The position numbers were made by a program, and so were the translations under genes. This document shows, piece by piece, positions 12,900 through 63,309 of a stretch of 64,000 bases of DNA (position 1 is its first letter; each line of letters begins with the position of its first letter). This DNA is from Leucoraja erinacea (Eukaryota), in the NCBI RefSeq assembly GCF_028641065.1, contig NC_073415.1:8990001-9054000 (forward strand), in the 5' to 3' direction. The notes under the pieces were generated by a model. That model ran no database searches, was not told where the DNA came from, and saw only the letters and a program-made list of their open reading frames with translations.

Positions 12900-12966
12900 T
12901 TGTTAATGTGAATACGAACAAGACGAGGTGAAGGTATCTCCCGCTTGAAGTGAGTGTAGAGACCAT
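12900..12966 (-). CDS. Gene A exon 1, signal peptide (MVSTLTSSGRYLHLVLFVFTLT)
   Basis: ATG at 12966 (gtcATGG), hydrophobic core, phase-1 donor |gttagt; joins D1 in frame (...TLT-T-KGNG/FEV); same peptide in gene B. Confidence 0.8.
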
Positions 12967-13571
12967 GACTGCGACCCTTGGCGCCTGCTGCCTCTCCGAT
13001 CACCGCCCGTCCAAATGAACACAGCGCTCCCACAGCCCACAAACAAAAATTCTGTAGACCAAAGATTCTAGTATCTTTACTGTACACTGCCCTTAACATC
13101 AGTGGAAGATTCACACTGGCTCTGATAATCAGCGCAATGGGTGTTACTCCCCACCCTTCTCACCCTCGCCTACATTCCGATCATAAAAAAACACCATCGG
13201 CAGTTCCTTGCTTCATAGTACCCTACTCCTCTACTCCTGCCTCATCATAGTAAACCTCCTACATTCCGTTCACTGTAACCCCCTCCCTACCCAGTCTCCC
13301 ATCACAGTAACAACTTCCACCCCCACCACCGCTGTTCCCCATCATAGTTCATACCTTCATAAGTTCTAGGAGCAGAAAAGACCCATCAAGTCTATTCCGC
13401 CAATCAATCTTTGCTGATCTATCTCTCCCTCTCAACCCTATTCTCCTGCCTTCTCCCCATAACCCCTGACACTACTAAAGTATGCAGTAGGGTTTTTATA
13501 ACAAATGTAAATGATTCTGTTTGTGTCTACATGATACCAAGTGTGCTAATTTACAATTCACCATTTTGTAA

Positions 13572-25020: not shown

Positions 25021-25298
25021 CTAACTCACAGGTGTAATACAACTATTATTATTTGGTCCAGTCTGTGAGTTATTGTCATTGCCGTTTGAAATCACTTCCT
25101 GCAAAGGAAAAATGTCCAGAGGTTCATTCACACGAGGGATTTCTTGGTTTCTGCTGGGTGTTGGATTCAGTACATTATATTCTCCTGTTTTCCGAGCTCT
25201 GTCGATCCGGCAATAGCAGATTATTGCCATTATTATTATTATTATTATTGCCCCCACAATTGAAAAGATGATGATGATCACCCATGACGATTCTTCAC
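25021..25298 (-). CDS. Gene B last exon: TM + cytoplasmic tail
   Basis: cacag| acceptor; WVIIIIFSIVGAIIIIIIMAIICYC TM, tail RARKTGEYNVL...CITPVS, TAG at 25021-25023. Confidence 0.9.
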
Positions 25299-28116: not shown

Positions 28117-30355
28117 CTGCAACAACAGAAAGATATTGTTAGAAACCCTATCAAAGCTTAGAGCAGCACGGTGGCGCGGCGGTAGATTTTAATGTTCAAT
28201 TTCAAGTGAGTTTTGTGTCCCTGTATAGGACAATTAAATTCTTGCTTTGCTTCAGCACACAGAACATAGTAGGCATTTACTACAGAACAGATCAGTGTGT
28301 CCATATACCATAATATAAATATATACACACATGAATAAATAAACTGATAAAATGCAAATAACAGAAAATGGGTTATTAATAATCATAGTTTTGTCCGAGC
28401 CAGGTTTAATAGCCTGATGGCTGTGGGGAAGTAGCTATTCCTGAACCTGGTTGTTGCAGTCTTCAGGCTCCTGTACCTTCTACCTGAAGGTAGCAGGGAG
28501 ATGAGTGTGTGGCCAGGATGGTGTGGGTCTTTGATGATACTGCCAGCCTTTTTGAGGCAGCGACTGCGATAAATCCCCTCGATGGAAGGAAGGTCAGAGC
28601 CGATGATGGACTGGGCAGTGTTTACTACTTTTTGTAGTCTTTTCCTCTCCAGGGCGCTCAAATTGCTGAACCAAGCCACGATGCAACCGGTCAGCATGCT
28701 CTCACCTTATGTAATTGCCTTATAGTAGTGTCAAAGACCTAGGTTCGATCTTGACTATGGGTGCTGTCTGTACGGAATTTGTACATTCTCCCCGTGACTT
28801 GTGTGGGTTTTCTCCAGGTGCTCCAGTTTCCTCCCGCACTCCAAAGACGTACAGGTTTATAGGTTAATTGACTTTAGCTATGGCTCTACATCCAACTGTA
28901 GTTGGACAATGATCGGAGGCAATTACCCAAAGTCACCCTATTATTCCCGGCATCATTCACCCCCTATACCAATCTCATCAAACCTAGTGACATGTTGGTT
29001 GAACACATCCTGATGAGTGGAATTTGAAATGTCCTCAATGTTTGGGCAACACTGTCAAAGTTCCCATTGAACACCAGTTGTAGGAAGGAACTGTAGATAC
29101 TGGTTCACACCGAAGATAGGCACAAAATGCTGGATAACTCAGCGGCACAGGCATCATCTCTGGAGAGAAGGAATAGGAGACATTTTGTGTCGAGACCCTT
29201 CTTCAGACTGCAAATCAGGGGAGAGGGAGATACAGCGATAAGGAAGGTGTCAAAATGAGACCTGAGACAATATAATAGATGAGGTCATGACAATATCATG
29301 ACATGAGACAAGATGAGGATCAAGAAAAATGTAGAATAGATCAGAATGTAGAATAGGAGAAGGTGACCACAAAGCAAACGGAGACAAAATGTCATTGGGG
29401 AGACTGGTGGGAGAACTGGGAAGGGGGAGGGATGGAGAGAGAGGAAGAGCAAGGGTTACTTGAAGTTAGAGAAGTCAATGTTCATACCACTGGGGTGTAA
29501 TCTGCCCAAGCCAAATATGAGGAACTGTGCCTCCAATTTGTGTTGGGCCTCACTGTGACAATGGAGGAGGCCCAGGACAGAAAGGTTGGTGTGGGAATGG
29601 GAGGGGATTTATAGTATTTAGCATCTCCACCCTGGCTGGTAACAAGCCAGAGGCTTCTATGTCACTTCAGGGAACACTTTGCTTTCAAAACAATGGTAAA
29701 TAGTCCACTGATTTAATTCCTGGGCGTAAGGAAGGTACTACAATATTTCTCCTTTATGTAAATGTTATGCATCTACATTCAGTTTGTATCTCTGATAAAT
29801 TCAGTTGCTGGTAGCTGCCTCTGTAACAGGATCTACATTAAAAACAGACAAAATAAGAGCAGGGCTTTATCACACACTCCAACGAGGCAGCTCTTGAATG
29901 AAGAAGGGTCTCGACCCTAAATGCCACCCATACCTTTTATCCAGAGATGTTGCCTGTCTTGCTTTTGTGTCTATCCTCCATGAGTAAGAATGTGGCCGAA
30001 TAACAGCATCTAGGTGACATCATGTTGCCTTTTTTCCACTAATTCCTTTGTTTTCCGTACAGGCCGATTAAAGTTTTGTGACTCTCCAGTACCAAATGTC
30101 CCCTTTAATATTCTTTAATAGTTGCCAAAGGAGGTAGTTGAGGCAGGGACTATCCCAACATTTAAGAAACTAGTTACACAGTTACATGGATAGGACAGGT
30201 TTAGAGGAATATGAGCCAAACGTGGGCAGGTGGGACAAGTGTAGCTCGAACATGTTGGCCGGAGTGGGAAAGTTAGGCCGAAGGGCTTGTTTCCACGCTG
30301 TATGACTATGACTCTATGATATCAATCATAATCTCTGGTTATCCAGCATGCTTAC

Positions 30356-30649
30356 CGTACACCTCAATGGAAATGTTGGCACTCCTTGTTAGATTTAATG
30401 GATAATCCTCAAAATCTGCTCTGCAGGTGAATTCAGTCAGTCCTGTGTCTTGTGGTGTCCATGTTGTTGTTGCCCAGATATCGTGGGATGATGACGTCTT
30501 TGTAACTGGCTTCAGTTCTTCTTCATTGTGAAACCATGTTACAGTCAACTTCTCAGCTGGATAGACATTTTGGACCTCACATTCCAACGTGGCCTCCTCA
30601 TTCACTTCAATGGGCTTTCTGTTGAGGATTCTAGGAGGCTTTGGAAAAG
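30356..30649 (-). CDS. Gene B Ig exon D3
   Basis: ttttcag| acceptor, |gtaagc donor, 294 bp; FPKPPRI...ATLECEVQNVYPAEKLTVTWF...EFTCRADF...IEVY. Confidence 0.9.
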
Positions 30650-32265
30650 CTGAAAAGACACATAAGGAATTCCCTGCATATTAGTTTTCTGTAGACAATG
30701 GAACTAAAGGAAAACAGACCAATACTGGCATTGCATTGAACGCAAAAACAATTCACCACACCCGAGTCAGAATCTGGATGTCCCGTAATTTAGTTTAGTT
30801 CAGAGATACAGCGCAGAAACAGGCCCTTTGGTACACCGAGTCAGCGCCAACTGGCACACTAATGCTATCCTATACACACTAGGGACAATTACAATTGTAC
30901 CGAGCCAATTAACCTACAATCCTGTACGGCTTTGGAGTGTGGGAGGAAACCGGAGATCCCAGATGAAATCCACGCAGGTCACGGGGAGAACGTGCAAACT
31001 CCATATAGTCAGCACCATTAGTCAGGATGGAACTCGTGTCTCAGGCGCTGCAAGGCAGTTGCTCTACCGCTGTGCCACACAAATTTGTTATTTAAATATA
31101 CTTCTCCTATGCTTCTGGCATCATGAGGATCTAACTCTGCTTTGAGCTCCAGCCACGGACTGTGGTACAAGCCAATACACTCACTGACATAGCACGACAC
31201 AAAGTGCTGGAGTAACTCAATGGGTCAGACAGCCTTTCTGGAGAACACAGATAGGTGATCTTTCACGACCCCTTCCATGCTCTCCAGGGATGCTGCCAGG
31301 CCTGATGAGATACTCTAGCACTTTGTATAAACCAGCATCTGCAGTTTCTTGTTTCTACTGTGCCCAGATAGGTTTGGTAACTGTTGTAAGGAACAATCTC
31401 CGGAGCACTCTAGAAGTTGTAATGAGGTGGGGGGGAGGTTGCTTGGCACAGCGGTAGACTTGCTGCCTTACAGCGCCTGAGACCCGGGTTTGATCCTGAC
31501 TATGTGTGTGGTTTGTACATATTTTGTACGTTCTCCCCATGATCTGCGTGAGTTTTCTCCAGGAGCTCCGTTTTCCTCCCACACTCCAAAGATGTGCAGG
31601 TTTGTAAGTTAATTGGCTTCATAAAAATTGTAAATCTACCCTAGTGAGTAGGATAATGTTAGTGTGCGGGGATCGCTGGTCGGCGTGGACATGGTGGGCC
31701 GAAGGGCCTGTCTCCACACTGTATCACTAAACTATACTAAACAATGCAGAAACACACATTGTGTTAACGTGTTCTACAGAGGAAACCTTGCAGACAGGGT
31801 AAACTCAACTTAAAGTGCTTGTTCTGTAGATAACTCATCTCTCCTGGTTTAGTGTGTGTGGCTTGCTTGTAAATATGTCAGCAGACAGCACGGTGGCACA
31901 GGGGTAGAGTTACTGTCTTACAGCACCAAAGACCAGGGATCAATCCTGACTAAGGGTGCTATCTGTACGGAGTTTGTACATTCTCCCCGTGACCTGTGTG
32001 GGTTTTATGCAGGAGCTCTGGCTTCCTCCCACACTTCAAAGACATGCAAGTTTTGCCGGCTAATTGGCATGCTACAATTATAAATTGTCCATAGTGTGTA
32101 GGATAGTATTGGTGTGGGGGGGATCTCTGGTTGGCACAGACCCGGTGGGCCCAATGGCCTGTTTCCACGCTGTATATCTAAACTAAACTTTACAAAATGC
32201 GACTCCAGTTTGTTTCAACTTAGTCTTGAGCAGAGGAGAGCAATTATTGTTCAAGTGGAACTCAC

Positions 32266-32580
32266 AGTAGGTTTGCAGAGTCACGGAGGAGGATTCGATT
32301 TCTTTTGTGGTATTTGTGTCCAAGTCCAGCTCTGCCAAGCATGTGTACACTTGTCCATCCTCAGCCATGCTTGCATTGAGATTGAGAATATTGACCACCG
32401 GAGTCACATCGTCTGGAAACTTTTGTTCCGTTGGGTGAACTGATTTCACAACTTTGCTCCCTCTGAGCCACTTGAGATGGAGCTTGGTGTTTGGATACAC
32501 TCTTGGACCGGTGCATTGAAGCTGATATGTTTTGTTAATTTCCATCACCTTTGGATGTGGTGCAATGACAAGATCTCGAT
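32266..32580 (-). CDS. Gene B Ig exon D2
   Basis: AG/GT, 315 bp, phase 1-1. Confidence 0.9.
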
Positions 32581-34080
32581 CTGTTGAAGGAGAATCATGT
32601 TAATAAAATTCACTGAAATAATGAACCTGAATAGTATTTGTCCCACCTCATCTCATATTCACCGATTATTCAAGTGATATACAGACAGCATGAATGTACA
32701 TATGTTCTTCAATATTTAGGGTGGCACAGTGGTGCAGTGGTAGAATTGCTGCCTTACAGCACCATAGACCCGGGTTTGATCTAGAATACGGGTGCTGTCA
32801 ATATGGAGTTTGTAAGTTCTCCCCATGACCACATTAGCTTTCTCCAATATCTTTGGTTTCCTCCCACATTCAAAAGAGGTACAGGTTTGGAGGTTAATTG
32901 GCTTGGTATAAGTGTAAATTGTCCCGAGTGTGTGTAGGATAGTGATAGCATGCCGGGATCGCTGGTCCTTATGTACTTGGTAGGTCGAAGGGCCTGTTTC
33001 CGCACTGTACCTCTAAACTGAACTAAACAAATCTAAATTGTAAGCAAGAACTTAAATGTTCTCTCCCCACAGATGCTGGTTGGAGTGCTGTGTTTCCAGT
33101 ATTTCAGATTTAGTTTAATTCAGAGATGCAGCATGGAAACAGGCCCTTCAGTTTACTGACTCCAATCCGACCATCAATCACCCGTTCATACGAGTTCTAC
33201 GTCATCCCACTTTCTCATCCACTCCCTACACAATAATGGCAATTTACAGAGGCCAATTAACCCATCTATTCTACATCACATTCTATATTATTTATTCTAA
33301 ATTTTCATTGCTCTCCATTCCCTTTGTCCTGTTTTCACACCTTTCACTTCCTTATCTATGTACCTCTCTCTCCCCTGACATCAGTCTGAAGAAGAGACTC
33401 AACCCGAAACATCACCCATTCCTTCTCTGCAGAGATACTGCCTGTTCCGCTGACTTACTCCAGCATTTTGTGTCTATCTTCAGTTTAAACCAGCATCTGC
33501 AGTTCCTTCCTACACATTCAGAGTTTGAGTTTAGTTTATTGTCACGTGTACCAAAGTACAGAGAGAAGCATTTGTTGTGTGCTGACTAGTCACCGGGAAG
33601 ACTATACATGATATTCTGCAATGTTACCTATGTAACTAATTAATTAACATTTTAGAATAAGAGGTTTCGCTTATTATACACTGTGATCACAAGTTTTCAA
33701 AGCTTTTTGTTTAGTTTAGTTTAGGGAAACAGGCTCTTGAGTCCGTGCCGATCAGTGATCCCTGCACACTAGCACTATCCTACACACACTAGGGACAATT
33801 TACAGTTTTACTGACAGTAATTAACCTACAAGCCTGGAGTGTGGGAGGAATCCGGAGCACCCGGAGAAACCCCATGCAGGTTACGGGGAAAACCTACAAA
33901 CTCGTAGTCAGGATCAAATCCATGTCTCTGGCGCTGTAAGGCAGCGACTCTACTGCTGCGCCACTGTGCTGTCCGGTTCTGCATATTATTCTGCTAGCAA
34001 ATGGTTATAGAGTGATACAGTGCAAACAGGCCCTTCGGCCCAACTCTCCTATACCGGTTAGAATAAGAAATTACACTTAC

Positions 34081-34356
34081 TGTACACAATGATCACTGTT
34101 TTGTTCTCAACTGTAGTATTGTTTTCAGATTTGCACAATACACTGCAAACCATTGGTAAATCCCACCTCATCACAGCTGGGAATTGGCATGTGTTTGAGT
34201 TGTTAACTTTATTGCAGTATTTATCTAGCCCTGGTTTTAGTTCCATGTTTATGTCAGGATTTAAACATGTGGTTCTGCAGTTCACATTCAAAGAGCCCCC
34301 GAATTCCACAGCTGGAGTGTCTGTGTTTATGTGAACCTCAAATCCATTCCCTTTCG
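34081..34356 (-). CDS. Gene B N-terminal Ig exon D1 (ICAM-type)
   Basis: AG/GT, 276 bp; VEFGGSLNVNCRTTC...INMEL...CSVLC. Confidence 0.9.
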
Positions 34357-34489
34357 CTGTCAGAGAAAAAACAAAACATCACAATAAGTAGAGATACAAA
34401 ATGCATTTAAACAAAGGGCAAAATCAGGGTAATTGCTTGATCTAAAAGAGTCATTTCAAATTACTCACAAACCATTAACATACATTACA

Positions 34490-35270
34490 TACTCTGATGA
34501 TACTTTGATCATGGACACCACCAACTCACAGGGACAGTTATGTCTGAGATGGACATTTTTGCAGAGTGGTGTAGGCGGAATTACCTTGACATTAATACCT
34601 CCAAAACAAAGGAGTTGGTTGTTGACTTCCGTAAAGGTCCTTCCATCATCCCCACTCTGTTAGTCAACAACCGGCTAATAGAAAGGGTCGAGACACCTTG
34701 GGACAATAATTGATCACAAACTCACCTTCCAACTAAATAGTGAAACTATATTTTCTAAGTGTCAGCAACACCTCTTTTTCCTGAGGAAACTCCACAGACT
34801 TCAGGCTCACCAGTCAGTCCTGACAGCTTTTTACAAATGTTTCATTGAATCAGTAATAACCTTCAATATGTCAGCCTGGTTTTGGTCACTATCCAACATC
34901 CATCGCAACCCACTAAACAAAATCATATCAATGAGCAGTAAAATAATCGGACTGGAGCAGGAACCATTGATCAGCATTTACAATAGAAGGACTAAACTAA
35001 AAGGAACACAAATAGCCTCAGACACCACTCACTCACTGCACAGCCAATACAGTCTTCTAGCCTCAGGCCAGAGATACAGGTCACTCACATTCAGAGCCAT
35101 GTCGAGTTTTGTGCCTACATCAATTAGACTGACGAATAGGTGATCTAATTAGTTATTCATTTATCTATATATACATTTTTACATTATTTTAATGTTTTTA
35201 TTGCCTATTCTTCATGTATTGTGCTTTGCAAGTTTTACCTACTGACCACTGTTGGACTGCTGGTATGTGA
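34490..35270 (+). mobile_element. Degenerate LINE RT fragment (Rex1/Babar or L2 group) in gene B intron 1, absent from gene A
   Basis: YSDDT motif, ...IASDTTHSLH...LLASGQRYRS...SFVP.SIRL remnant. Confidence 0.7.
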
Positions 35271-36879
35271 TGTGTGTGGTATATTGTGTTGTGTTGCTGG
35301 GTATGTGAACAAGGTATGTTCCCGATGTTGGGGAAGTCCAGAACAAGGGGTCACAGTTTAAGGATAAGGGGGAATTCTTTTAGGACCGAGATGAGGAAAA
35401 CATTTTTCACACAGAGAGTGGTGAATCTCTGGAATTCTCTGCCACAGAAGGTAGTTGAGGCCACAGTTCATTGGCTATATTTAAGAGGGAGTTAGATGTG
35501 GCCCTTGTGGCTAAAGGGATCAGGGGGTATGGAGAGAAGGCTACTGAGGATACAGGATACTGAGTGGGATGATCAGCCATGATCATATTGAATGGCGGTG
35601 CAGGCTCGAAGGGCCGGAAAAAAAAGTTAATTGAATTGAATTGTGAAACTTTTTTTTCTACGAATTATATAACTCCAGGAACTGGGAGTCGGTGTTAGAG
35701 ACTGAGGTGATTCTTAACATTTCCCGGTGTTGAAGTAAAGAATGTTTCTGTTTAGCAAGTGTTGAATATACAGTAGAATAAAGAGTTTGACAACAGAGAA
35801 ACGAATGAAGTGTTTTTACAAGGCGGAGTTCCATATCACCATTGTACATGCTATTTTTTTTTAAGATATACACAAAATGCTGGAGTAACCCAGCGAGTCA
35901 GGCAGGCAGCCTCTCTTGAGAAAAGGAAGAGGTGAAGTTTCGGGTCGAGACCCTTCTGCAGACAGCCAGGACAAAAGGGAAACGAGAGATTTAGAACAAA
36001 TGGATGTAAGATATGCAAAAAACGTATCAATGATAAAGGAAACGGGCCATTGTTAATTCAGCGGCTCAGGCAGCGTGTGTGGAAGGAACAGACAGGCGGG
36101 ACCCTTCAGGCAAAATGCATTCCAGGCAAACATTTAAATCACAAGAGAATCACATTTAAATCCTCTGAAAAAACATGTTCAAACTTCCTTCCAGATGGAA
36201 AGCCGGTGATGTTTCTGACCCGCCGGGGCAGCGGGTCCCCGTTCCCGTGTGGAACAGGCATCACTGCCGGGGCTGGAGACGAGACCTCCCCCGTCCGTGA
36301 TGCTCACTGCCCGGCGGCCCAGAGGCCCCGGTCCACAGGTACTCACTCACTCACTCACTTACACTCACTCACACTCACACAATTACACTCACACAATTAC
36401 TCTCACACGAACATTCACACTCACTCTCTCTTTCACACATCCACAAACACTCACAAACACTCATAAACACACTCACTTACACACGCACTCACACACACGT
36501 TCTCCCTCACTCACACAATTACTCTCACACGCACAATCACTCACTCACTCTCATACGCGCACACACTCATACGCATACACACTCACCCTCACATAGACAT
36601 ACACATACTCCACACGCTCGCACACTTTTACACACATGCTCACACTCACACTAGCTGTTCCGACAATGGCGTGATCACAGCGTCCAGGCTGCGCCCCTCT
36701 CCCACCGCGCCCCTGCTTCACTCCGCCAAAAATAAGCAATCATCTGCTTTTTGTTTTGACATTAATAAATGACAAGATATCCCCCCGCTGATTATTGAGC
36801 TCCGCTTAATAGCTCGGCCATGAAATAAAAACGCTATATTCCATGGGAGAAGCGCGTTTGATGTGAGGATTGTACTAAC

Positions 36880-36946
36880 TTGTTAACGTGAATACGAACA
36901 AGACGAGGTGAAGGTATCTCCCGCTTGAAGTGAGTGTAGAGACCAT
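36880..36946 (-). CDS. Gene B exon 1, signal peptide
   Basis: ATG at 36946, 67 bp, |gttagt donor; the six exons sum to 1515 nt = 504 aa + stop. Confidence 0.85.
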
Positions 36947-37055
36947 GACTGCGACCCTCCTCGGCGCCTGCTGCCTCTCCGATCACCGCCCGTCCAAATG
37001 AACACAGCGCTCCCACAGTCCACACACTCGCTGTTAATGCAAACAATCTCTCTGA

Positions 37056-37066
37056 TTTCCCGGAAA
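37056..37066 (-). promoter_or_regulatory. GAS / STAT palindrome TTTCCGGGAAA
   Basis: Perfect TTC-N3-GAA with extended palindromic arms, 110-120 bp upstream of the gene B ATG. Confidence 0.7.
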
Positions 37067-37172
37067 CAATTCAGAAACTAAACTTCGGAGAAAGCCCCTA
37101 AAAAAAAGAGTTTAAAGAAAAAGCCTCCCCTCGGCTCAACTTTGTGCTCGCCGTTGCAACAGAGACTGACTT

Positions 37173-37184
37173 GGGGAAAGTCCA
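37173..37184 (-). promoter_or_regulatory. NF-kB-like site TGGACTTTCCCC
   Basis: Near-consensus kB site ~230 bp upstream of the ATG; a second, weaker site GGGGCTTTCTCC lies at 37087-37098. Confidence 0.6.
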
Positions 37185-38719
37185 GTGACAATCGTGCGGT
37201 AAACACGCCCATAATGTGCAGAGCGATGACCACTGCCGAGAGGTATGTACAGGGTCTTTGCTGTAGACTGCCCTTAACATCAGTGGAAGATTCACACTGG
37301 ATCTGAGCTCTGATAATCAGCGCAATGGGGTTACTCCCCATCTCTCTCACTCCCTCACATTACATATGAAGAAAGACTGGATAGACTCGGTTTGTACTCG
37401 CTAGAATTTAGAAGGTTGAGGGGGGATCTTATAGAAACTTACAAAATTCTTAAGGGGTTGGACAGGCTAGATGCAGGAAGATTGCTCCCGATGTTGGGGA
37501 AGTCCAGAACAAGGGGTCACAGTTTAAGGATAAGGGGGAACATTTTTAGGACCGAGATGAGAAAAACATTTTTCACACAGAGTGGCGAATCTGTGGAATT
37601 CTCTGCCACAGAAGGTAGTTGAGGCCAGTTCATTGGCTATATTTAAGAGGGAGTTAGATGAGGAACTTGTGGCTAAAGGGATCAGGGGGTATGGAGAGAA
37701 GGCAGGTACAGGATACTGAGTTTGGATGATCAGCCATGATCATATTGAATGGCCGAATGGCCTACTCCTGCACCTATTTTCTATGCTTCAATGCTTCTAT
37801 TCCCATCACAGTAAACCAGCATCTGCAGTTCCTTCCTTCACAGTAACCCCCCCCCCCCCTCCCACCACACACACACACACACCCCTCCTGCCTCTCATCA
37901 TAGACCTCCCACATTCCCATCACTGTAACCCCCTCCCTACCCAGTCTCCTGTCACAGTAACAACCCCCCCCCTGTTGTTCCCCATCATAGTTCATACCTT
38001 CATAAGCTCTATAAGCAGAATTAGACCCATCAAGTCTACTCCGCCAATCAATCTTTGCTGATCTATCTCTTCCTCTCAATCTTTGCTGATCTATCTTTCA
38101 TTCTGCTGCCTTTTCCCCATAACCCCTGACACCCGTACGAATCGAGTATCTGTCATTCTCTAAAAATATTACCCCCCACAATAATGAATTCCACAGTTTC
38201 ACCACCCTCTGACTGAAGAACTTCCTCCCTATCTCCTTTTTAAAGGTACGTCCTTTTATTCTGAGGCTATGGCCTCTGGTCCTAGACTCCTCCCACTAGT
38301 GGAAACATCCTCTCCACATCCACACTATCCAGCCTCTGCAAAAGTCATAGATAGGTTTCTTGAACTGCTTGAAGGTAGATAGAAACGCAGGAGAAACTCA
38401 GCGGGTGAGGCAGCATCTATGGAGCGAAGCAATAGGTGACGTTTCGTGTTGAGACCCTTCTTCAGACCTGAAACATCACCTAGTCCTTCACTCCATAGAT
38501 GCTGCCTGACTCACTGAGTTTCTCCAGCATTTTTATCTACCTTCGATTTTTCCAGCATCTGAACCGCTTTAGATCGTTTGACAAATGCTGAAGACTTGGA
38601 CATCACCTGGGATTAGCCTTCATGGTTCATTCACAGGGAACACATATATCACCTTCTTTGGTGCACTGTCCTCTACACTCTTTCTGTGAATTCTGTGACG
38701 GCAATGGCATATTCATCTA

Positions 38720-40070
38720 GCATAGTGAACCCCAAGAAGGCTACCGGCCCAGATGGAGTCCCTGGTAAGGTGCTCAAAGCGCGCGCCCACCAGCTCACTG
38801 CCATCTTCACCAGAATTTTCAACCTCTCCCTGGCCCAGGCAGTTATTCCGTCCTGCCTAAAATCAGCCACAATCGTCCCTGTGCCGAAGAAGTCTACCAT
38901 CACCAGCCTTAATGACTACCGTCCTGTGGCCCTCACTCCGGTAATCACAATAGTGCTTCGAGAGGTTGGTCCTCCAGCACATCAAGGACTATCTACCACC
39001 AGACTTCGACCCCCACCAATTCGCCTATCGCCAAAACAGATCCACAGAAGACGCCATTACCGTAGCTCTCCACTCTGTGCTGAGCCATCTGGAGCAGGGG
39101 CAGAGCTACGTCCGGATGCTCTTTGTGGATTTTAGTTCAGCCTTTAATACAATCATTCCGGACATTCTCATTGGTAAACTGGTCACTCTCGGCCTCCCCA
39201 CTGTCACATGTGCCTGGATAAAGGATTTCCTCACCAACCGGCCCCAGACTGTGAGACTCGGCCCCCACCTCTCCTCCACTCGCAGGTTGAGTACCGGTTC
39301 CCCACAGGGCTGTGTGCTAAGCCCCCTCTTATACTGTCTCTACACCTACGACTGTAGTCCGGCCCACAACAACAACCGCATCGTCAAATTTGCTGACGAC
39401 ACTACTGTGGTCGGACTTATTTCAAAGGGAGACGAGGCAGCCTACAGAGAGGAAGTCCTGAAGTTGACAACCTGGTGCTCAGAAAACAACCTGGCTCTGA
39501 ACACCAGGAAAACAAAAGAGCTCATTGTCGACTTCAGGAGGCACAGCACCAACTTAGCCCCCCTACACATCAACGGCGAGTGTGTGGAGAGGGTCAACAC
39601 CTTCCGGTTTCTCGGCGTCCATATCGCTGCTGACATCTCCTGGACGGACAACACGACAGCGGTCATCAAGAAGGCTCAGCAGCGGCTGCACTTCCTGAGG
39701 GTCCTCAGGAAGCACAACCTGGACTCTAACCTGCTGCTGACCTTCTACCGCTCGTCCATCGAGAGCCTGCTGACATACTGCATTACAGCATGGTATGGCA
39801 GCTGCACCATGGCAGACAGGGAGAGGCTTCAGAGGGTAACCAGGACAGCGCAGAGGATCATTGGCTGCCCTCTCCCCTCCCTGATGGACATCTACACCTC
39901 CCGCTGCCTTAGCAGGGCAAAGAAGATCATCAAAGACAGCTCCCATCCTGCGTTTGGACTGTTCGACCTGCTGCCCTCTGGAAGGCGCTATAGGTGCATC
40001 AAATCCAGGACAAACAGACTCAGGAAAAGTTGCTTTCCGAGAATTATAACTACTATAAATTCAAATTCAA
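38720..40070 (+). mobile_element. Rex1/Babar-type LINE, 5'-truncated; RT largely open with one frameshift near 38950
   Basis: ORFs 38686-39135 and 38966-40258: [47 protein letters not shown]. Confidence 0.92.
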
Positions 40071-42750
40071 CATGCACTGACTCACAACATGCACTTCCAT
40101 CTGTATATATGTACATACATATAGCGCCGCCCAACACCTATTCCCCCCCCCCCCTCTCCCTTTGTGGACTAAATTGTATGTATGCACTGAGTACGAGCAG
40201 CTTTCATTTCACTGTACATGTATGTATATATGTGGCATATCTATCTATATCTATCTAGTCACTTTCTGGAAGGAATCATTCCGCTTCAGTAGGAAGGAAC
40301 TGCAGATGCTGGATCAGTCTGAAGAAGGGTCTCGACCAGAAATGCCACCCATTCCTTCTCTCCAGAGATGTTGCCTGTCCCGCTGAGTTACTCCAGTATT
40401 TTGTGTCTACCTTATGCTTCAGTTTGTGTTTGTAAGCACAGAGTAGAATCACATTACAATATTTCAGAGGAAATGAGTCAGTTAAACGTCACCTCCAACT
40501 GTGACTTCCTGATTGCCTTTCACTGTTTCTAGTCCTAGCACAGCCCTTGTGACCATGCTCCCCGACCAAACAAAGCAGATTGAAAAGGCAAACCTTTGTT
40601 TTAGCTACTGTCGTGAACACACAAAACACCATCATCTGCTGTTAACGACCATATCTGTTCATTATCCCAAGATATGGGTTTGAAGAGCTTCCAACTAACC
40701 TAAACTAAACTAAATGAAACTTTAGGATTTTGTGGCCTTTGCAGTATTGCAAAGCCTTTCACCAAAGCCACTAATGATGTTAGGTCAGCCTGTGGCAAAG
40801 ATTTAAACAAGTCTTTGTCACAGCTAACCACAATATCCTCTTCCAAAATAGACTATGCATCCAAAACTGATTGTAGTTTACTCGGTTCCATTGTGGACAA
40901 TTCAATTATAGAAAAAAAAACACATCAGAGCAACTTATATGTAATTGTTTGTTTCAGAATCACTGGCTATGGTCAACATGACACAGTCCTCTAGCTAACA
41001 ATGATCTATTCTACATTTTCCATCAACTTCATCCCTTTTGATCTTTAGTTTTCACAACTTTTCCCTCCATTTCTGATCCCTCTCCCCTGACTTTCAGTCT
41101 GAAGAAGGGTCTCGACTCAAAATGTCACCCATTCCTACTATCCAGAAATGATGCCTGTCCTGCTGGGTTACTCCAGCATTTTATGCCTATCTTAAAAACA
41201 AAAGATAGCATGTACTATGGTGATATGGAGCTCTGCCTTGTAAAAACACTTCTGATGACATCTCCATTTTCAAACTGTTTATTCTATATTCAACACTCGC
41301 TAAACAGAAACTTCCTTTACTTAAACACTGGGAAGAATTAAGAATCACCTCAGACTCTAACACTGACTCCATTTCCTGGAGTTATATAATTTGTATATAA
41401 ATGTTTTGCTGCTTTGTGATATAATGGCACAACGGTACATGTGACGTATGGCCATGTGGTAGCGGTTGTCAGCCTTCAATATTGAGTTTAGTTTAGTTTA
41501 ATTTAGAGATACAGCGTGGAAACAGTCTCTTCGGCCCGCTGATCCCCGCACATTAACACTATCCTGCCCTAGGGACAATTTTTACATCTATATCAAGCCA
41601 ATTAATCTACAAACCGGTACATCTTTGGACTGTGGAAGGAAACCGAAGTCCTCGGCGAAAACCCACGCAGTCACGGGGAGAGCGTACAAACTCCATACAG
41701 ACACCACCTGTAGTCCGGATTGAACCTGGGTCTCTGGCACTGTAGGTCAGCAACTATACCGCCGCACCACCATGCCCCCCACAACACATGTTCTAAAGTT
41801 ACTGGTGAATCCTGGAATTTGTTCAATGTGTTATTTACCATTTTTTACAATGATGGGTCATGGACCACATCCCAGTACACGACACCTAGCAGCCCACTGC
41901 ATTCACACCCTAGGTTGTTTATAATTTTGGAGTCATAGAGTCAATACAGCATGGATCATCAAGCACCCATCTACACACAGTGTGTCACTACACCAAAACT
42001 AATCAATTTTGCTCTCAACACAAACCCATCCACCAGGGTGGCAGAGTGGCACAGCGGTAGAGTTGCTGCCTTACAGCGCCAGAGACCTGAGTTCGATCCT
42101 GACTGCGGATGCTGTCTGTACGGAATTTATACACGAAAAAGATAAATTTGAACATTTGTTCAAAATCTTATTTATTTATATATTCAATTTTGTATAAAGC
42201 AACATAGAATTAATTTAAAAAAAGCATTGCAATGTAAATGTTTGCAGCATTTTTACAGATTTTTCATTGCTATTGAAGTATGCAATAAGGTTATTCTAAC
42301 AAATGAAAATGATTCTGTTCATGTCTACACGATACCAAGTGTGGCAGACAACACTCTGTGTCAATACTTACAATGCAAATTTATCAAATTTAATCTGGAA
42401 TTATATTTCCCATCTTCCAAATTACTGTGCCATGCAATATATGTGTCAGAGGACGCGACTGGCTATTTGCCAAAAGCATCAATTCACTCCTCATCATCTC
42501 ATTTAATTACTGGCAAAGTGCCCGTAACATTCCCACATAAATGGAAACGGAAATATCAAATTCCCTTGTCCTAAAAGTCAGTGAGTACTGGAGGTCAGTT
42601 GAAATATTTCCTATTTTATCTAATCTCGTTTAATTTAGAGATACAGCACGGAAACAGGCCCTTTGGCCCACCGAGTCCACGCCGACCTGCGATACCCGCA
42701 CACTAACATTATCCTACACTCACTGGGGACAAATTACAATTAAACCAAGC

Positions 42751-44084
42751 CGGTGGCCCTTACCTCGGTAGTCATGAAATGCTTTGAGAGGCTGGTGAAG
42801 AATCACATCTGCGCCTTCCTCCCTCGGAACATGGACCCGTTGCAGTTTGCATACCGTCCGAACAGGTCCACGGACGATGCGGTCTCCCAGGTCTTGCACA
42901 CCGCTCTCTCCCATCTGGACAGCCAGAAGGGGGGCTACGTGAGGATGCTGTTCATAGACTACAGTTCAGCCTTCAACACGATAGTCCCCACCAGACTGGC
43001 CGGGAAGCTACTGGAATTGGGGCTCAACACCTCCCTGTGTGCCTGGGTCCTGGACTTTCTCACCGCCAGGCCCCAGGTAGTCAAGATGGGAGGGAATACA
43101 TCGAAGTCCCTCACCCTGAGCACAGGATCGCCCCAGGGTTGCGTCCTCAGCCCCCTATTGTACTCCCTGTACACACATGACTGTGTGGCTAGGTTCAGCT
43201 CCAATTCAATAATTAAGTTTTCTGATGACACTGTGGTGGTGGGCCTGATCTCAGACAATGATGAGAGGGCCTACCGGGAGGAGGTGGCTGATCTAGCACT
43301 CTGGTGCCAGGAGAACAGCCTCCTCTTGAACATCAAAAAAACGAAGGAGCTGATCATGGACTTTAGGAGGGCACATCATCCGAGGACGTACACTCCCATG
43401 TGGATAAATGGGGATACTGTGGACAGTGTGAGCGGTTTTAAATATCTGGGAGTCCACATCTCTGAGGATATGACATGGTCATCACACGCCTCAGCACTGG
43501 TGAGTAAGGCAAGGCAGCGCCTTTACCACCTCAGGCAATTGAGGAAATTCAGAGTGTCTCCGAGGATCCTCCAGTGCTTCTAAGCAGCGGCGGTGGAAAG
43601 CATCTTGTCCGGGAACATTACCATCTGGTTCGGGAATTGCTCTGCCAAGGACAAGAAGGCTCTGCAGAGAGTAGTGCGTTCGGCCGAACGCACTATGGGA
43701 ACTTCACTCACCCCCCTGCAGGAACTATACAACAGGAGGTGCAACTCCAGAGCAAACAAAATCATGAGAGACCTCTTCCACCCCTGCAACGGACTGTTCC
43801 AGCCGCTACGGTCAGGCAAACGCCTCCGTTGCCATGCAGTGAGAACGGAGAGGTTGAGAAGGAGTTTCTTCCCAGAGGCAATTCGGACTGTAAACGCCTT
43901 TCTCACCAGGGACTAACTGTACAGAACGTTTTTCCTTCTATTATTTATTATGTAAAATAATATGTGTGTTATGATTGTGTTTATAATTTGTTTGGTTGTT
44001 TTGTTGTTCCGCGAGCATTGCCACTTTCATTTCACTGCACATCTCGTATGTGTATGTGAGAAATAAACTTGACTTGACTTGACT
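42751..44084 (+). mobile_element. Rex1/Babar-type LINE, 5'-truncated, one in-frame stop (43581-43583), nested in a minus-strand SINE
   Basis: ORFs 42753-43583 and 43593-43916 in the same frame; aataaa(cttga)n tail; SINE halves at ~42630-42750 and 44085-44262. Confidence 0.92.
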
Positions 44085-58400: not shown

Positions 58401-59003
58401 ACTGCCTGCATCCCGGGAATGAGTGGGACTATGAGTGTTTGACGGCACAGGGCCCGTACTCGCTGGAGTGTAGAAAGATGAGGGGGGACCTAATTGAAAC
58501 TTACCAAATAGTGAAAGGCCTGGACAGAGAGGATGTGGAGATGATGTTTCCACTAGTGGGAGAGTCTAGGATCAGAGGGCACAGCCTCAGAATTAAAGGA
58601 TGCTCCTTTAGAAAGGAGATGGGGAGGAATTTCTTTAGTCAGATGGTGGTGAATCGGGGGAATTAATTGCCACAGAGGTCTGTGGAGACCAAGTCAATGG
58701 ATATTTTTAAGGCAAAGCTTTTTGATTAGCACATGTGTCAGAGGTTATGGGGAGAAGGCAGGGAATGGGGTTAGGAGGGAGAGATAGATCAGCCATGATT
58801 GAATGGCGGAGTAGATTTGATGGGCCGAATGGCCTAATTCTGCTTCGATCACTTATGATCTTATGACCGTTGCAGGGTCCCCTCGACAGAAACAAACAAA
58901 AAGAAACTAGGAACTGGTGTTTCGGCTGATTTCTTTTGGCATCGGTTTACTTTGTTGTGATGAAGGTAAGTATTTTAATCAAGAGACATGTTTTCAAACT
59001 GAC

Positions 59004-59282
59004 CTTTCACTTTGATCTCCACTTTGTTCTCATCAGCTCCATATTTATTACTAGCTGTACATTTGTATATTCCATTATTTTCCATCGTGGCTTCAGAAAT
59101 ATAGAGGACTGCGGAAGAATTGATTGCAATGTTGGTACTTTCAGGGTATTCCCATTTTAATGTTGGCTCTGGGTTCCCCAGTGTGTCACAGACTAAGGTG
59201 ATGCTGTCCCCATTAGCCACATGCACTGGAGACTCTGTGGAGCTTTGGTTATTTACTGATATCATTGTGCTTCGAGGTTCAC
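59004..59282 (-). CDS. Gene C Ig exon (I-set/C2 type, VCAM D3-like)
   Basis: ttcacag| acceptor, |gtcagt donor, 279 bp; EPRSTMISVN...ITLVCDTLGNPEPTLKW...NGIYKCTASNKYG. Confidence 0.88.
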
Positions 59283-59784
59283 CTGTGAAAAGAAAGAAAA
59301 TGCATTAAAGTTAAGCAAATTAAGCACGGTGACGCGGGGGTAGAGCTGCTGCCCCACAGCGCCAGAGACCCGGGTTTGATCCCGACTATGGGTGCTATCT
59401 GTACTGAGTTTGTATGTTCTCCCCATGACCTGCGTGGGTTTTCTTCTCTGTCCTGATGCCAGTTTGTATTTATCATCTTTACATTGTACAGATTATTAAT
59501 TGCTACTGGGGTAAACATTATAGTAGCATCCAAGACTTTTGTCATACGTTCCATCACTACTCTGGTATAATAAAGAAAATTAACCAACTAACATTCATTC
59601 AAAATGTTTAAGAAGGAACTGCAGATGTTGGAACAATGGAAGGTAGACAAAAATGCTGGAGAAGCTCAGCGGGTGAGGCAGCATCTATGGAGCGAAGGAA
59701 TAGGTGACGATTCGGGTCGAGACCTCACCCGCTGAGTTTCTCCAGCATTTTTGTCTACCTAACATTTATTCAAAGGTAACTTAC

Positions 59785-60099
59785 GGTAGGTTTGCAAGGT
59801 CACGGAGGAGTTTGTGATTTGCAAAGTGGTGTTGGAGCCTAGGTCTACTTCCGCCACGCAGGTGTAAACCTGTCCATCGTCCGTAGTCCTTGCAGTAAAT
59901 TGTAAGACATTCCTTAATCGTTTATCCTCATGCGAGATACCATTTTCTTCTGTAGAATTGGTCTCGATGATCTTGTTTCCTCTTTGCCATTTGAGAATTA
60001 GCTTATTGATAGGATTGACCCTGGGGCCAGTGCATTCCAGGCTATATGTTGTATTAATTTCCAACACTTCAGGAGGGGAAGTAATGTTCAACTCTCGAT
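59785..60099 (-). CDS. Gene C Ig exon D2-type
   Basis: caacag| acceptor, |gtaagt donor, 315 bp; clearly homologous to D2 of A/B (CTGPRV...DGQVYTC...SSVTLQTY). Confidence 0.9.
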
Positions 60100-61088
60100 C
60101 TGTTGAAATATAATCACAATGGACGGTAATCATCGAGGCATTACGATGTGTTAAAGGACTGTTGACAGTAATCATCGAACCAGTCTGTATTTGAACATGT
60201 TTCCCTGAAGATTCAAAATATAGCCAACGTGCAAACAGTCTGTGAGTGAAACTGAAACCCATTGTCAAATATGCCCTCTTAAATTTCTATTCCAGTTTAT
60301 AGGTTTAAGGTGAGGGGAGGATAGATTTAATAGGAAGCCAAGGGTAACCAGTGAGCAGTGCTGAACTACGATCTACAACATTGATGATCCTCAGACTATC
60401 ATTGATCAGACTTTGCTGGCTTTACCTGCATTAAATGTTATTCTATTTTCATATATCTGTCCACTGTAAAAGGCTCGATTGTAATCATGTATTGTCTTTC
60501 CGCTGGCTGCTTTCCCTGTAGCTCGGTATACGTGACAATGAACTAAACTGAACTGAACTAGAGGTGTATTTTTTTCCACGCACAGTATTATACATTATTT
60601 AGTAAGACCAAAGTTAGAATGGTTGAGGTATCTATTAGATGAAATATTAACAATATTATAGAACATTACATCAGCCCACAATGTTTGTGCCGAACATGAT
60701 GCCAAATTTAAACTGATCTCATCTGCCTGTACATGATCCATATCCCTCTATTCCCTGCACTTTCTTATGCCTATCCAAAAGCCTCCTAAATGCTTTTTAT
60801 CACATCTGCCTCCATCACCACCCTTGCAAGGCTTTCTGGGCCCCCAGCACTCTCTGTGTAAAATGAAACTTGCCCCACACATCTCTATTAAACTTCCCAC
60901 CTCTCACCTTATAGCTACGCCCTCTAGTGTAAGACATTTCTTCCCAGGGAGAAAGGTTCTGACTATATGCCCTCTCATAATTGTGTATACTTCTATCGTC
61001 ACCCCTCAACCTCCTACATCCGAAAGAAAACAATCCAAGTCTATCCAACCTCTCCCTATAGCTAAAAACCTCTAATCATGGCAGCATT

Positions 61089-61492
61089 CTGCTAAACCTA
61101 CTCCAAAGAGCAGCACGGTTGCATAGCGGTAGAGTTGCTAACTTACAGCACTAGAGCCCCGGGTCCTGGGTTCGATCCTGACTACGGGTGCTGTCTGTAC
61201 AGAGTTTGTACGTTCTTCCCGTGACTGCGTGGGTTTTCTCCGAGATCTTCGATTGCCTCCCACACTCCAAATGTGTACAGATATGCGGGTTAATTGGCTC
61301 CGTACGAATGTGAATTGTCCCTAGTGTGTGGAATAGTGTTAATGTGCGGTGATCACTAGTCGATGTGGATGGCTTAGTATAAATGTAAATTGTCGTTAGT
61401 GTGTGTAGATAGAGACATCACTGGCTGGTGCTGACCCAGTGGGCCAAAGTGCCTGATTCTGTGCTGTATCTCGAAACTAAACTAAACTAAAC
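61089..61492 (+). mobile_element. V-SINE (HE1-like) with internal duplication
   Basis: Same motifs; the aaattgtc-tagtgtgt segment occurs twice. Confidence 0.75.
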
Positions 61493-63060
61493 AAAGCCTC
61501 TGCATCTTTCTGTAAAGGGGCCACCAGAACTGCATGCAATACTCCAAATAAACACTCCAAGAATCTAAATATTATGGAATTATAATGATCACAATTTATA
61601 ATCAGGAAATAAATAAAAATTTAGAATGGTTGCGGTATCGTTTACATGACAAAATATGAACTATATTATGAAATAATAATGGTCAGGATATTGTAATCAG
61701 GGAAGGAATTATGTGAGGGATGAAAGAACAGAAGGGTGAGGAGGCAGCTGATTTAACTTTCAACAATCTTTGTTTAAAAGAACTCTAACAGCAAATATGT
61801 GTCCTCTGGCACCCCATTTCCTCTGGATAAATAAACTAAACACTTTATGTCATCTGAGCTGTAGATAAGAGAAAACGAGATCCTGTGTCAGTATTTTTAG
61901 ACACAATCGACTCCATTAACATGGGGCTGCTGAAACAGGCTTATCTGAAATTGTTGTCTAAATACATTATACCACAACCAGTGTGATGAAGCAGGAGAGG
62001 TCACTGCCACATCACTTAAGAATTGTTCACGGCCACTAGTTTAACATCCTCTGTTTTTTATTGGACTGAGGAGATCGGAGCTTTTTTCGGTAGCTAAAAT
62101 ATGTTTGGTGGCTAATACATGTTCCCGATGTTCGGGGAGTCCAGAACCAGGGACCACAGTTTAAGAATAAGGGGTAAGCCATTTAGAAAGGAGATGAGGA
62201 AACACTTTTTCAAACAGAGAGTGGTGAAACTGTGGAATTCTCTGCCTCAGAGGGCGGTGGAGGCAGGTTCTCTGGATACTTTCAAGATAGGACTCTTAAA
62301 AATAGCGGAGTCAGGGGACATGGGGCGAAGGCAGGAACAGGGTACTGATTGGTATAAATGCAAATTGTCCCCAGTGTGTGTAGGATAATGTTAGTGTGAT
62401 GGGATCGCTGGTCAGTGCGGACTTGGTGGACTGAAGGGCTTGTTTCTGAGCTGTATCTCTAAACTAAACTAAAGTCTATTCAGCCATTCAGTCTGATCTA
62501 TTTTTCCCACTCAATCTCATCCTCTTGCCTTCTCTCCCTATGAGTTTTGACGCCCTTAATAATCAGGAACCTGTCAACCTCTGCTTTAAAAATACCCAAT
62601 GACTTGGCCTCCACCGCCATCAGTGGCAGTGAATTCCACCATTGCACCTCCCCGGCTGAAAAAAATCCTCCTCATCTCCATTCTGAAGATACGTCCTTTT
62701 ATTCTGAGACTGTGCTCTTGTGTTCTACAGCCTCCCATTACTGGAAACTGTGAGAGACATTGGCACATTGCTCAGCTGTGTCAATTCCACCTTTGTGTAA
62801 ATGAATGAATGAATGATTAAGTTTATTGGCCAGGTATTCACATACAAGGAATTTGCCTTGGTACTCCGCCCGCAAGTGACAACATGACATACAGTGACAG
62901 TTAGGAATAACACTAAACATTAAACGTTAATAATAAATCATTATTGATTAAACATGTGAATTAAATATAATGTCAGAGCAAAAGGATGCTACAGATTTTT
63001 GATTATTGAGTAAGAACTATTACTTGTGGAAAAAAGCTGAAGAGAAATTCTTGTACTTAC

Positions 63061-63309
63061 TGTAGACAGGAATTATTGTATTCTGGGCATCACTTTCCCC
63101 AGATGAGCATATCGCAGTGCAATACATTTGAAGAGACCACATCAGAATTGTTGAGTAAGAATGTGCCACCCATTGAGGTTGTTTTGTTACATTATATCCT
63201 TTCGTTCCTTCAATGAATATCCTTGTTGCTACACAAGATGAACTGCAGTTCACTATCAAAGGATGTCCAAATTCCACAGCTGACGGTTCTGCTTTGATCA
63301 ATACTGTAT
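63061..63309 (-). CDS. Gene C ICAM-type D1 exon (upstream exon(s) outside the window)
   Basis: ctgcag| acceptor, |gtaagt donor, 249 bp; VEFGHPLIVNCSSSC...IFIE...MYCTAIC...IPVY. Confidence 0.88.

What the first reader, a model, noticed from the sequence alone, without database searches (positions are those of the whole stretch)
37025..37254. ICAM-1-style cytokine-inducible promoter (GAS palindrome + variant kB) upstream of gene B
Seen: TTTCCGGGAAA at -120..-110 and TGGACTTTCC at about -238..-229 from the ATG, both on the sense strand, plus a second kB-like GGGGCTTTCTCC between them. Established (recalled, positions to be verified): the human ICAM1 promoter has the same 11-mer as its IFN-gamma/IL-6 response element about 110 bp upstream of the ATG, and a TGG-initiated variant kB site (TGGAAATTCC) about 110 bp further up. 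Inference: same motifs, order and spacing, implying deep conservation or convergence of STAT + NF-kB induction of an ICAM in a likely cartilaginous fish.
Basis: partly seen in the sequence, partly recalled or inferred. Interest (0 to 1): 0.75.

Follow-up and report, generated by a model that had tools for sequence, protein, structure and literature searches.

The report
STAT site in skate ICAM leader
Just upstream of a little-skate ICAM-like adhesion gene lies a perfect binding site for interferon-activated STAT proteins, at the same distance from the start codon as in human ICAM1, but the one RNA contig available shows it inside the transcribed leader rather than in front of the gene, and the NF-kB-like motifs are no more than chance would give.

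Summary
They lie on the minus strand, upstream of the ATG (36946) of gene B. Gene B is a little-skate (Leucoraja erinacea) ICAM-family gene whose NCBI model P0152 uses this ATG.

The 11-mer TTTCCGGGAAA (37066..37056, -120..-110) is unique in the window, with 0 expected, and is the optimal STAT1 site. I also found a second GAS-type site, TTCTCCGAA, 27 bp upstream. It overlaps the "middle kB-like" motif.

Both kB-like motifs miss the consensus by one base. Such near-matches occur about once per 600 bp here, so they carry no weight.

Papers confirm the human ICAM1 layout: ATG at +41, kB at -188, an Ets/GGAA core at -75. The ATG-relative coincidence is therefore real.

A spliced RNA contig joins exon 2 to an exon 1 that runs to at least 37157, 211 nt upstream of the ATG. 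The 264 nt before the ATG are also ATG-free. Both GAS sites therefore lie in the 5' leader, and TGGACTTTCC sits at the apparent transcript start. This is not the human arrangement.

Paralog A lacks the whole 227-bp block.

Verdict: a plausible STAT element in an ordinary promoter and leader; the ICAM1-style architecture is unproven.

The parts
37028..37254 (-). 227-bp block present in gene B and absent from paralog A. It holds the apparent transcript start and most of the 5' leader, with both GAS-type sites and both kB-like motifs.
   Evidence: blastn of the block against the window: only 37255-37300 and 36990-37027 match gene A (13074-13119 and 13007-13044). Nothing else in the window matches (alignment).
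37056..37066 (-). GAS 1: TTTCCGGGAAA, -120..-110 from the ATG, with the optimal STAT1 core.
   Evidence: 1 match, 0 expected. PMC5737217 gives TTCCCGGAA as the strongly preferred STAT1 site. The repeat-filtered STAT1 ChIP-seq motif is GATTTCCGGGAAATG (PMC2897888).
37084..37092 (-). GAS 2: TTCTCCGAA (fits TTCNNNGAA), -146..-138, 27 bp centre to centre from GAS 1.
   Evidence: 2 TTCNNNGAA loci in the 314 bp upstream of the ATG. The window density predicts about 0.11 loci (44 strand-counts per 64 kb).
37088..37099 (-). kB-like GGGGCTTTCTCC, one mismatch to GGGRNWYYCC.
37175..37184 (-). kB-like TGGACTTTCC, one mismatch (first base), 18-27 nt upstream of the 5' end of the RNA contig.
   Evidence: for the motif; for the contig end at 37157.
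36880..37157 (-). Exon 1 as far as RNA shows it: leader 36947-37157 (at least 211 nt) and coding 36946-36880 (22 codons plus 1 nt, signal peptide).
   Evidence: run X1, record 1: 616-nt contig, 36880-37157 with 0 other letters, joined to 34081-34356. The peptide is identical to residues 1-22 of P0152.
34357..36879 (-). Intron 1 (GT at 36879-36878 and AG at 34358-34357 on the minus strand).
   Evidence: joint in the X1 contig; X1 depth 0 in the unique intron bins. Sequence.
34081..34356 (-). Exon 2, ICAM N-terminal Ig domain (D1).
   Evidence: 91 aa, exact in P0152. ICAM_N hit.
36986..36991 (-). GC box GGGCGG at -45..-40, shared with gene A.
13045..13073 (-). 29 bp in paralog A that stand in place of the block. 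Gene A keeps exon 1 (ATG 12966) but has no GAS-type or kB-like motif within 320 bp upstream.
32267..32575 (-). Exon for Ig domain 2 of gene B.
   Evidence: 103 aa, exact in P0152.
25024..25290 (-). Transmembrane and cytoplasmic exon of gene B.
   Evidence: 89 aa, exact in P0152.

Best explanation
The 227-bp block is the core promoter and most of the 5' leader of gene B, a little-skate ICAM-like gene.

Transcription starts at or a little upstream of 37157, probably between 37157 and 37212. The consensus GAS (37056-37066) and a weaker GAS-type site 27 bp upstream therefore lie about 65-110 bp downstream of the start, in DNA that encodes an unstructured, ATG-free leader.

My best reading is that the pair acts as a promoter-proximal STAT-responsive element. 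Activated STAT dimers would bind the DNA, possibly cooperatively on the two sites, and raise transcription after interferon-gamma or IL-6-type signals. This works like the STAT element of mammalian ICAM1 but sits differently relative to the start site.

The kB-like motifs are most likely chance. TGGACTTTCC lies in the core-promoter zone.

Shown: the motifs, the gene's identity, the splice, and the extent of the transcript.
Inferred: the exact start site, STAT binding, and inducibility.
For: - The GAS 11-mer is unique in the window, with 0 expected. It matches the optimal STAT1 site (PMC5737217) and the STAT1 ChIP-seq motif including flanks (PMC2897888).
- There are two TTCNNNGAA loci in 314 bp against about 0.11 expected.
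- A spliced contig in run X1 joins 34081-34356 to 36880-37157, with 0 other letters in exon 1, and X1 depth is zero in the unique intron bins.
- The 264 nt before the ATG contain no ATG. This is true of only 0.6% of positions on this strand of the window.
- The leader folds less stably than 197 of 200 shuffles, as expected of a translated leader.
- Paralog A lacks the block, and its two NCBI models (P0006, P0151) start in the mucin exons rather than at exon 1. This fits loss of the start site.
- The block is present in two other coded organisms: X16 contig 36960-37389 with 2 other letters in 430, and X18 contig 36995-37296 with 9 other letters and 14 gap letters.
- Gene B is ICAM-family.
Against: - The transcript extent rests on one contig of depth 6 from a run whose RNA nature is a guess by the tool. 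The splice argues for RNA.
- Contigs cannot show a true 5' end. They could also merge two overlapping transcripts.
- The raw RNA run X23 gave only about 2 reads' depth on exon 1 and none beyond the 36961-37101 bin. Its exon-2 reads are A-type or a third haplotype, so it neither confirms nor excludes a second, proximal start.
- No binding or induction data exist.
- In organism E the block's divergence (9 of 302) is the same as in the neighbouring intron (19 of 576 and 7 of 233), so no extra constraint is visible.
- A single perfect motif can arise by chance somewhere in a scan of many promoters.
Confidence: 0.5

Rival explanations
1. One reading: an ICAM1-style cytokine-inducible promoter. Under this view the GAS and the TGG-initiated kB variant are upstream elements of an inducible proximal start site some 40-60 nt before the ATG, kept since the common ancestor with mammals or reached by convergence. 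The long-leader transcript seen here would be a second, upstream, constitutive start.
For: - ATG-relative positions match the human gene closely. Skate GAS is at -120..-110 and the kB-like motif at -238..-229.
- In human the ATG is at +41 (PMC5751206), the kB site at -188 and a GGAA core at -75 relative to the TSS (PMC3320982). That is roughly -229 and -116 from the ATG.
- The spacing between the two motifs is 118 bp in skate against about 112 bp in human.
- Both kB variants start with TGG and end with TTCC.
- X23 raw reads show no depth beyond the 36961-37101 bin.
- An upstream second start in human ICAM1 is recalled; I did not see it in any paper here.
Against: - The only transcript evidence runs through both GAS sites to 37157.
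- The ATG-free run of 264 nt argues that the long leader is the form under selection.
- No TATAWA occurs in the 314 bp upstream.
- The GC box lies at -45..-40, where the proximal start would have to be.
- kB near-matches are at chance density.
- Skate genes A, B and C are lineage-specific duplicates, not shown to be 1:1 orthologs of ICAM1. The best solved relative is ICAM-2.
Confidence: 0.15
2. Chance motifs: the GAS and kB-like strings have no regulatory role, and the block is simply gene B's promoter and leader.
For: - The kB-like motifs are at or below chance density.
- The finding was picked from a very large scan in which any immune-type motif near any gene could have been flagged.
- There is no visible extra conservation of the block over the intron in organism E.
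- The motifs lie in transcribed DNA.
Against: - A perfect 11-mer optimum has 0 expected in 64 kb.
- A second GAS-type site 27 bp away makes two loci against 0.11 expected.
- The gene family is one whose mammalian member is STAT1-induced through a response element in this region (PMC10215618 passages).
Confidence: 0.3

Closest known systems
Human ICAM1 proximal promoter (variant NF-kB site plus the IFN-gamma/IL-6 response element bound by STAT1/STAT3)
   Same: Both genes belong to the ICAM family. The ATG-relative positions agree within about 3 nt for the GAS and about 10 nt for the kB-like motif. The order is the same, and the kB variant starts with TGG in both. A GC box lies downstream of the GAS in the skate. 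STAT1-Sp1 synergy at human ICAM1 is known to me only from a title in a reference list.
   Different: In human the elements lie upstream of a TATA-driven start 41 nt before the ATG (PMC5751206; PMC3320982). In the skate the observed transcript begins at least 211 nt before the ATG, so the GAS sites are in the leader. No TATA box is found. The kB-like motif sits at the transcript start and is not above chance. There is also a second GAS-type site.
Generic gamma-activated sites (GAS) of STAT1/3/5 target genes
   Same: It has the TTCNNNGAA palindrome with a 3-nt spacer and the optimal TTCC(G/C)GGAA core with T/A flanks, as in the STAT1 in-vitro optimum and the ChIP-seq motif.
   Different: It lies downstream of the apparent start site. 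Binding and induction are untested in any cartilaginous fish. My searches found no paper on GAS elements or ICAM promoters in elasmobranchs.
RefSeq ICAM1-like, VCAM1-like and ICAM5-like genes of other elasmobranchs and the elephant shark
   Same: These are homologous proteins found with the D2 profile: Mobula, Pristis, Stegostoma, Rhincodon, Narcine, Heptranchias and Callorhinchus. They share the signal-D1-D2 layout.
   Different: Their promoters could not be read here. Gene B is shorter, with 3 Ig domains in P0152, and belongs to a skate-specific duplication.

Membership tests
GAS (gamma-activated site, STAT dimer binding element) | Palindrome TTCNNNGAA with a 3-nt spacer | tested here: met
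   TTCCGGGAA at 37057-37065 and TTCTCCGAA at 37084-37092.
GAS (gamma-activated site, STAT dimer binding element) | High-affinity core TTCC(G/C)GGAA | tested here: met
   GAS 1 only. It matches the optimum in PMC5737217 and the ChIP-seq motif in PMC2897888.
GAS (gamma-activated site, STAT dimer binding element) | Bound by tyrosine-phosphorylated STAT and needed for cytokine induction | not testable with these tools
   Needs EMSA or ChIP and reporter assays in skate cells.
NF-kB site | Fits GGGRNWYYCC | tested here: not met
   The window has 4 matches, none in the block. Both candidates have one mismatch.
NF-kB site | Occurs more often than chance near the gene | tested here: not met
   105 one-mismatch matches against 142 expected. 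28 relaxed 9-mers against 30.6 expected.
ICAM family protein | ICAM N-terminal domain (Pfam PF03921) above the gathering score | tested here: met
   P0152 scores 26.4 bits against a cut-off of 21. The single exon alone scored 18.3 bits, below the cut-off.
ICAM family protein | Closest solved relatives are ICAMs rather than other Ig adhesion molecules | tested here: met
   ICAM-2 8e-12, ICAM-5 3.6e-07, ICAM-1 7e-06, VCAM-1 2e-03.
ICAM family protein | Acidic integrin-binding residue in D1 | tested here: inconclusive
   HMMER aligns skate G-L-D with the G-L-E of ICAM-2 across a gap. A nearby M-E-L is an alternative. No structure or binding data.
ICAM1-type cytokine-inducible promoter | GAS and kB at the human distances from the ATG | tested here: met
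   Skate -120..-110 and -238..-229. Human about -116 and -229 by conversion from PMC3320982 and PMC5751206.
ICAM1-type cytokine-inducible promoter | Both elements lie upstream of the transcription start, with a TATA box about 30 nt before it | tested here: not met
   The RNA contig reaches 37157, upstream of both GAS sites. No TATAWA in 314 bp. A second, proximal start is not excluded.
ICAM1-type cytokine-inducible promoter | Elements conserved in orthologous promoters | not tested
The block exists in two close relatives, but the letters at the motifs were not shown.

The most novel reading that the evidence does not exclude
The STAT site about 115 nt, and a TGG-initiated NF-kB variant about 230 nt, before the start codon are an ancestral ICAM control module kept in place since the last common ancestor of skates and humans (about 450 million years). 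They would be used in the skate from an inducible proximal start that the unstimulated RNA sampled here does not show.
Probability: 0.12. Interest if true: 0.7.

Novelty: new member of a known kind. Interest (0 to 1): 0.33.

Why it matters
If the GAS pair is functional, interferon/STAT control of an integrin ligand would already exist in cartilaginous fish, the oldest lineage with LFA-1-type integrins (PMC8359198 passage).

The recent duplicate A, which lost the block, would then be a natural promoter knock-out for comparison.

If the positional match with human ICAM1 reflected descent, it would be a rare case of promoter architecture kept over 450 million years.

As it stands, this is a predicted transcription-factor site in an otherwise ordinary promoter and leader. 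Its value is as a cheap, well-defined target for CAGE and reporter tests.

Tried and rejected
- Orthologous promoters. I searched 1.84 billion representatives with a profile of the three D2 exons in the window. This gave 181 hits at E up to 0.001 and 75 at 1e-10. I named ten of them. The decisive conservation test is therefore missing. The word search (search for homologous proteins) was not used, because an exon-length query cannot see full-length models and it gives no genomic context.

- Block as a transposon or repeat. Rejected: it has no other copy in the window.

- Insertion in B versus deletion in A. I favour deletion in A. The block carries B's transcript start and is present in two other organisms. 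A's 29-bp filler contains GTCTACAG, which also stands in B's upstream flank, as in a templated repair. Without an outgroup this is an inference.

- RNA element in the leader. Rejected: z-score +1.88, with 197 of 200 shuffles folding at least as well. The only Rfam matches have E 0.75 and 0.94, far below gathering scores.

- ISRE, AP-1, C/EBP, CRE, TATA and GATA consensus scans of the 314 bp upstream found none.

- Raw RNA run X23 as a TSS map. Too few reads, and its exon-2 reads carry gene-A letters or a third haplotype, so it cannot place B's start.

- Papers. I read passages only (find mode) in PMC5737217, PMC11430830, PMC2363043 (no hits), PMC3320982, PMC10215618, PMC2212358, PMC3340179, PMC2897888, PMC8359198, PMC2192508, PMC5751206 and PMC10450919.
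  - PMC10215618 gives -187..-178 as relative to the translation start, whereas PMC3320982 gives -188 relative to the TSS. I followed the latter because it numbers the kB and the -75 core on one scale.
  - The original human pIRE papers (Caldenhoven 1994, Look 1994) are not held. That the human element is exactly this 11-mer, at -76..-66, is recalled.
  - Supplementary files were not opened. Supplemental table S1 of PMC3320982 may hold the exact oligos.
  - Searches found no paper on ICAM promoters or GAS elements in elasmobranchs.

Full report
WHAT IS THERE

The finding lies on the minus strand. Read in the sense direction, the three motifs are exactly as described.
- TTTCCGGGAAA is at 37066..37056, which is -120..-110 from the A of the ATG at 36946.
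- TGGACTTTCC is at 37184..37175, which is -238..-229.
- GGGGCTTTCTCC is at 37099..37088.

The finding's coordinates coincide with a 227-bp block (37028-37254). It is present in gene B and replaced by 29 bp (13045-13073) in the recently duplicated gene A. A/B homology resumes on both sides. The block has no other copy in the window, so it is not a repeat.

THE GENE

The ATG at 36946 opens a 22-codon signal-peptide exon that ends at a GT donor. Downstream on the minus strand lie Ig-domain exons and a transmembrane exon.

A profile of the D2 exons of the window's three ICAM-like genes found 181 relatives at E up to 0.001 among 1.84 billion representatives. The cluster look-up places gene A in Leucoraja erinacea (XP_055520210.1 and XP_055520209.1). 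It also returned P0152, a 406-aa NCBI protein. P0152 contains, exactly, the translations of exon 1, exon 2, the D2 exon and the TM exon of gene B, and 78 of 79 residues of the D4 ORF.

P0152 passes Pfam's ICAM_N threshold, with 26.4 bits against a cut-off of 21. Its best solved relatives are ICAM-2 (8e-12), ICAM-5 and ICAM-1, ahead of VCAM-1. NCBI calls the relatives in other elasmobranchs ICAM1-like, ICAM5-like or VCAM1-like. "An ICAM in a cartilaginous fish" therefore holds at the family level. One-to-one orthology with ICAM1 is not shown.

ARE THE MOTIFS MORE THAN CHANCE?

The 11-mer occurs once in the window, with none in 100 shuffles. The 9-mer core occurs twice against 1.18 expected, about 0.005 per 250-bp promoter.

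It is the site that STAT1 prefers in vitro (PMC5737217, conclusion passage). With its flanks it matches the repeat-filtered STAT1 ChIP-seq motif GATTTCCGGGAAATG (PMC2897888, table 1).

Scanning the 314 bp before the ATG, I found a second GAS-type site, TTCTCCGAA (37092..37084), 27 bp from the first. That makes two loci where the window's density predicts about 0.11.

The kB story is weak.
- Neither motif fits GGGRNWYYCC.
- One-mismatch matches number 105 in the window against 142 expected.
- The relaxed 9-mer has 28 matches against 30.6 expected.

No ISRE, AP-1, C/EBP, CRE or TATAWA is present. One GC box lies at -45..-40.

THE HUMAN COMPARISON

From passages:
- The human translation start is at +41 of the TSS (PMC5751206, figure 7 legend).
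- The kB site TTGGAAATTCC is at -188, and GGAA cores are at -181, -118 and -75 relative to the TSS (PMC3320982).
- A review places the STAT1-bound IFN-gamma element in the region -116 to -36 (PMC10215618).

Converted to the ATG, the human sites lie near -229 and -116, against -238 and -120 in the skate. That the human element is this exact 11-mer at -76..-66 is recalled; the original papers are not held.

WHERE TRANSCRIPTION STARTS

This is the key new evidence. I laid four runs on 34000-38200.

Run X1 is labelled by the tool as a guess at RNA. It holds one 616-nt contig of depth 6 that covers 34081-34356 and 36880-37157 and skips 34357-36879. X1 depth is zero in the unique intron bins. The skipped part has GT..AG ends on the minus strand, so the contig is spliced cDNA.

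Its exon-1 part has 0 other letters and includes 130 nt of the B-only block, so it comes from gene B. It ends, at the contig's own end, at 37157. That is 211 nt before the ATG, upstream of both GAS-type sites, and 18 nt short of TGGACTTTCC.

Independently, the 264 nt before the ATG contain no ATG (the nearest is at 37212). Only 0.6% of positions on this strand have such a run. This fits a long leader kept free of upstream start codons. The leader is also less structured than 197 of 200 shuffles and has no Rfam match.

I therefore place the start between 37157 and about 37212. The GAS sites then lie in the leader, roughly +65 to +110, and TGGACTTTCC lies in the core-promoter zone.

CAVEATS

- The evidence is one contig. 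Contigs cannot show true ends and can merge overlapping transcripts.
- The raw RNA run X23 gave depth of only about 1.3 in the exon-1 bin, 0.5 in 36961-37101 and 0 beyond.
- X23's exon-2 reads carry gene-A letters at 34170, 34183 and 34225 in all reads, with a mixed pattern elsewhere. X23 therefore cannot place B's start.
- A second, inducible proximal start is not excluded.

THE DUPLICATE AND THE RELATIVES

Gene A keeps exon 1 (ATG 12966, same peptide and donor) and the GC box. It has no GAS-type or kB-like motif within 320 bp upstream, and it has an upstream ATG at -133. Its two NCBI models begin in the mucin exons of intron 1, not at exon 1. This fits loss of the start site with the block.

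The block is present in contigs of two other coded organisms: X16, 36960-37389, 2 other letters in 430; and X18, 36995-37296, 9 other letters and 14 gap letters. In X18 its divergence equals that of the adjoining intron (19 of 576 and 7 of 233). No extra constraint is visible at this short distance. Which letters differ was not listed.

VERDICT

The gene is an ICAM-family gene of the little skate, the GAS is as good as a GAS can be and has a partner site, and the ATG-relative match with human ICAM1 is genuine.

Against it, the motifs lie within the transcribed leader of the only transcript seen, the kB-like motifs are at chance level, there is no TATA box, and conservation is untested.

My odds:
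- About 0.5: a promoter-and-leader block with a probable STAT-responsive GAS pair downstream of the start.
- About 0.3: chance motifs without function.
- About 0.15: a true ICAM1-style architecture with an unseen proximal inducible start.

The scan had already noted this gene pair on the same window (s1-878675, s1-878714, s1-878700). I know of no note on other DNA.

Noticed in passing
window 30339-30605 (minus): An Ig-domain ORF gives the best Pfam hit of all the exons (ICAM1_3_5_D2, 31.3 bits). It is not part of the NCBI model P0152, nor of the Logan transcript protein P0153. Most of it has no counterpart in gene A: B 30413-31406 is unmatched. It is possibly a skipped or decaying exon.
   Followed up: partly
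window 12900-12966 and 9120-11752 (minus): Gene A keeps an intact signal-peptide exon (ATG 12966). Both NCBI models of gene A (P0006, P0151) nevertheless begin inside the mucin-repeat exons and so lack a signal peptide.
   Followed up: partly
window 34081-34356: In raw RNA run X23 the D1-exon reads are a mix of gene-A letters and a third pattern that is neither A nor B of this assembly. The Logan protein P0153 is 381 of 406 identical to P0152, and many of the changes are in D1. D1 looks polymorphic or subject to exchange between the copies.
   Followed up: partly
window 58975-63331 (minus): A third ICAM/VCAM-like gene (C) has D1 and D2 exons (50% identical to B in D2) and an I-set-like third domain. 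Its first exon and promoter lie beyond the window's end.
   Followed up: no
window 35270-35700 and 37360-37800: Two copies of a very abundant repeat tail flank exon 1 of gene B. Summed contig depths there run into the millions in the DNA runs and the thousands in RNA. Reverse-transcriptase ORFs lie at 38966-40258 and 42753-43583.
   Followed up: no
window 36947-37211 (minus): The 264 nt before gene B's ATG are free of ATG, which is true of 0.6% of positions on this strand. As RNA the leader folds less stably than shuffles, z +1.88.
   Followed up: yes
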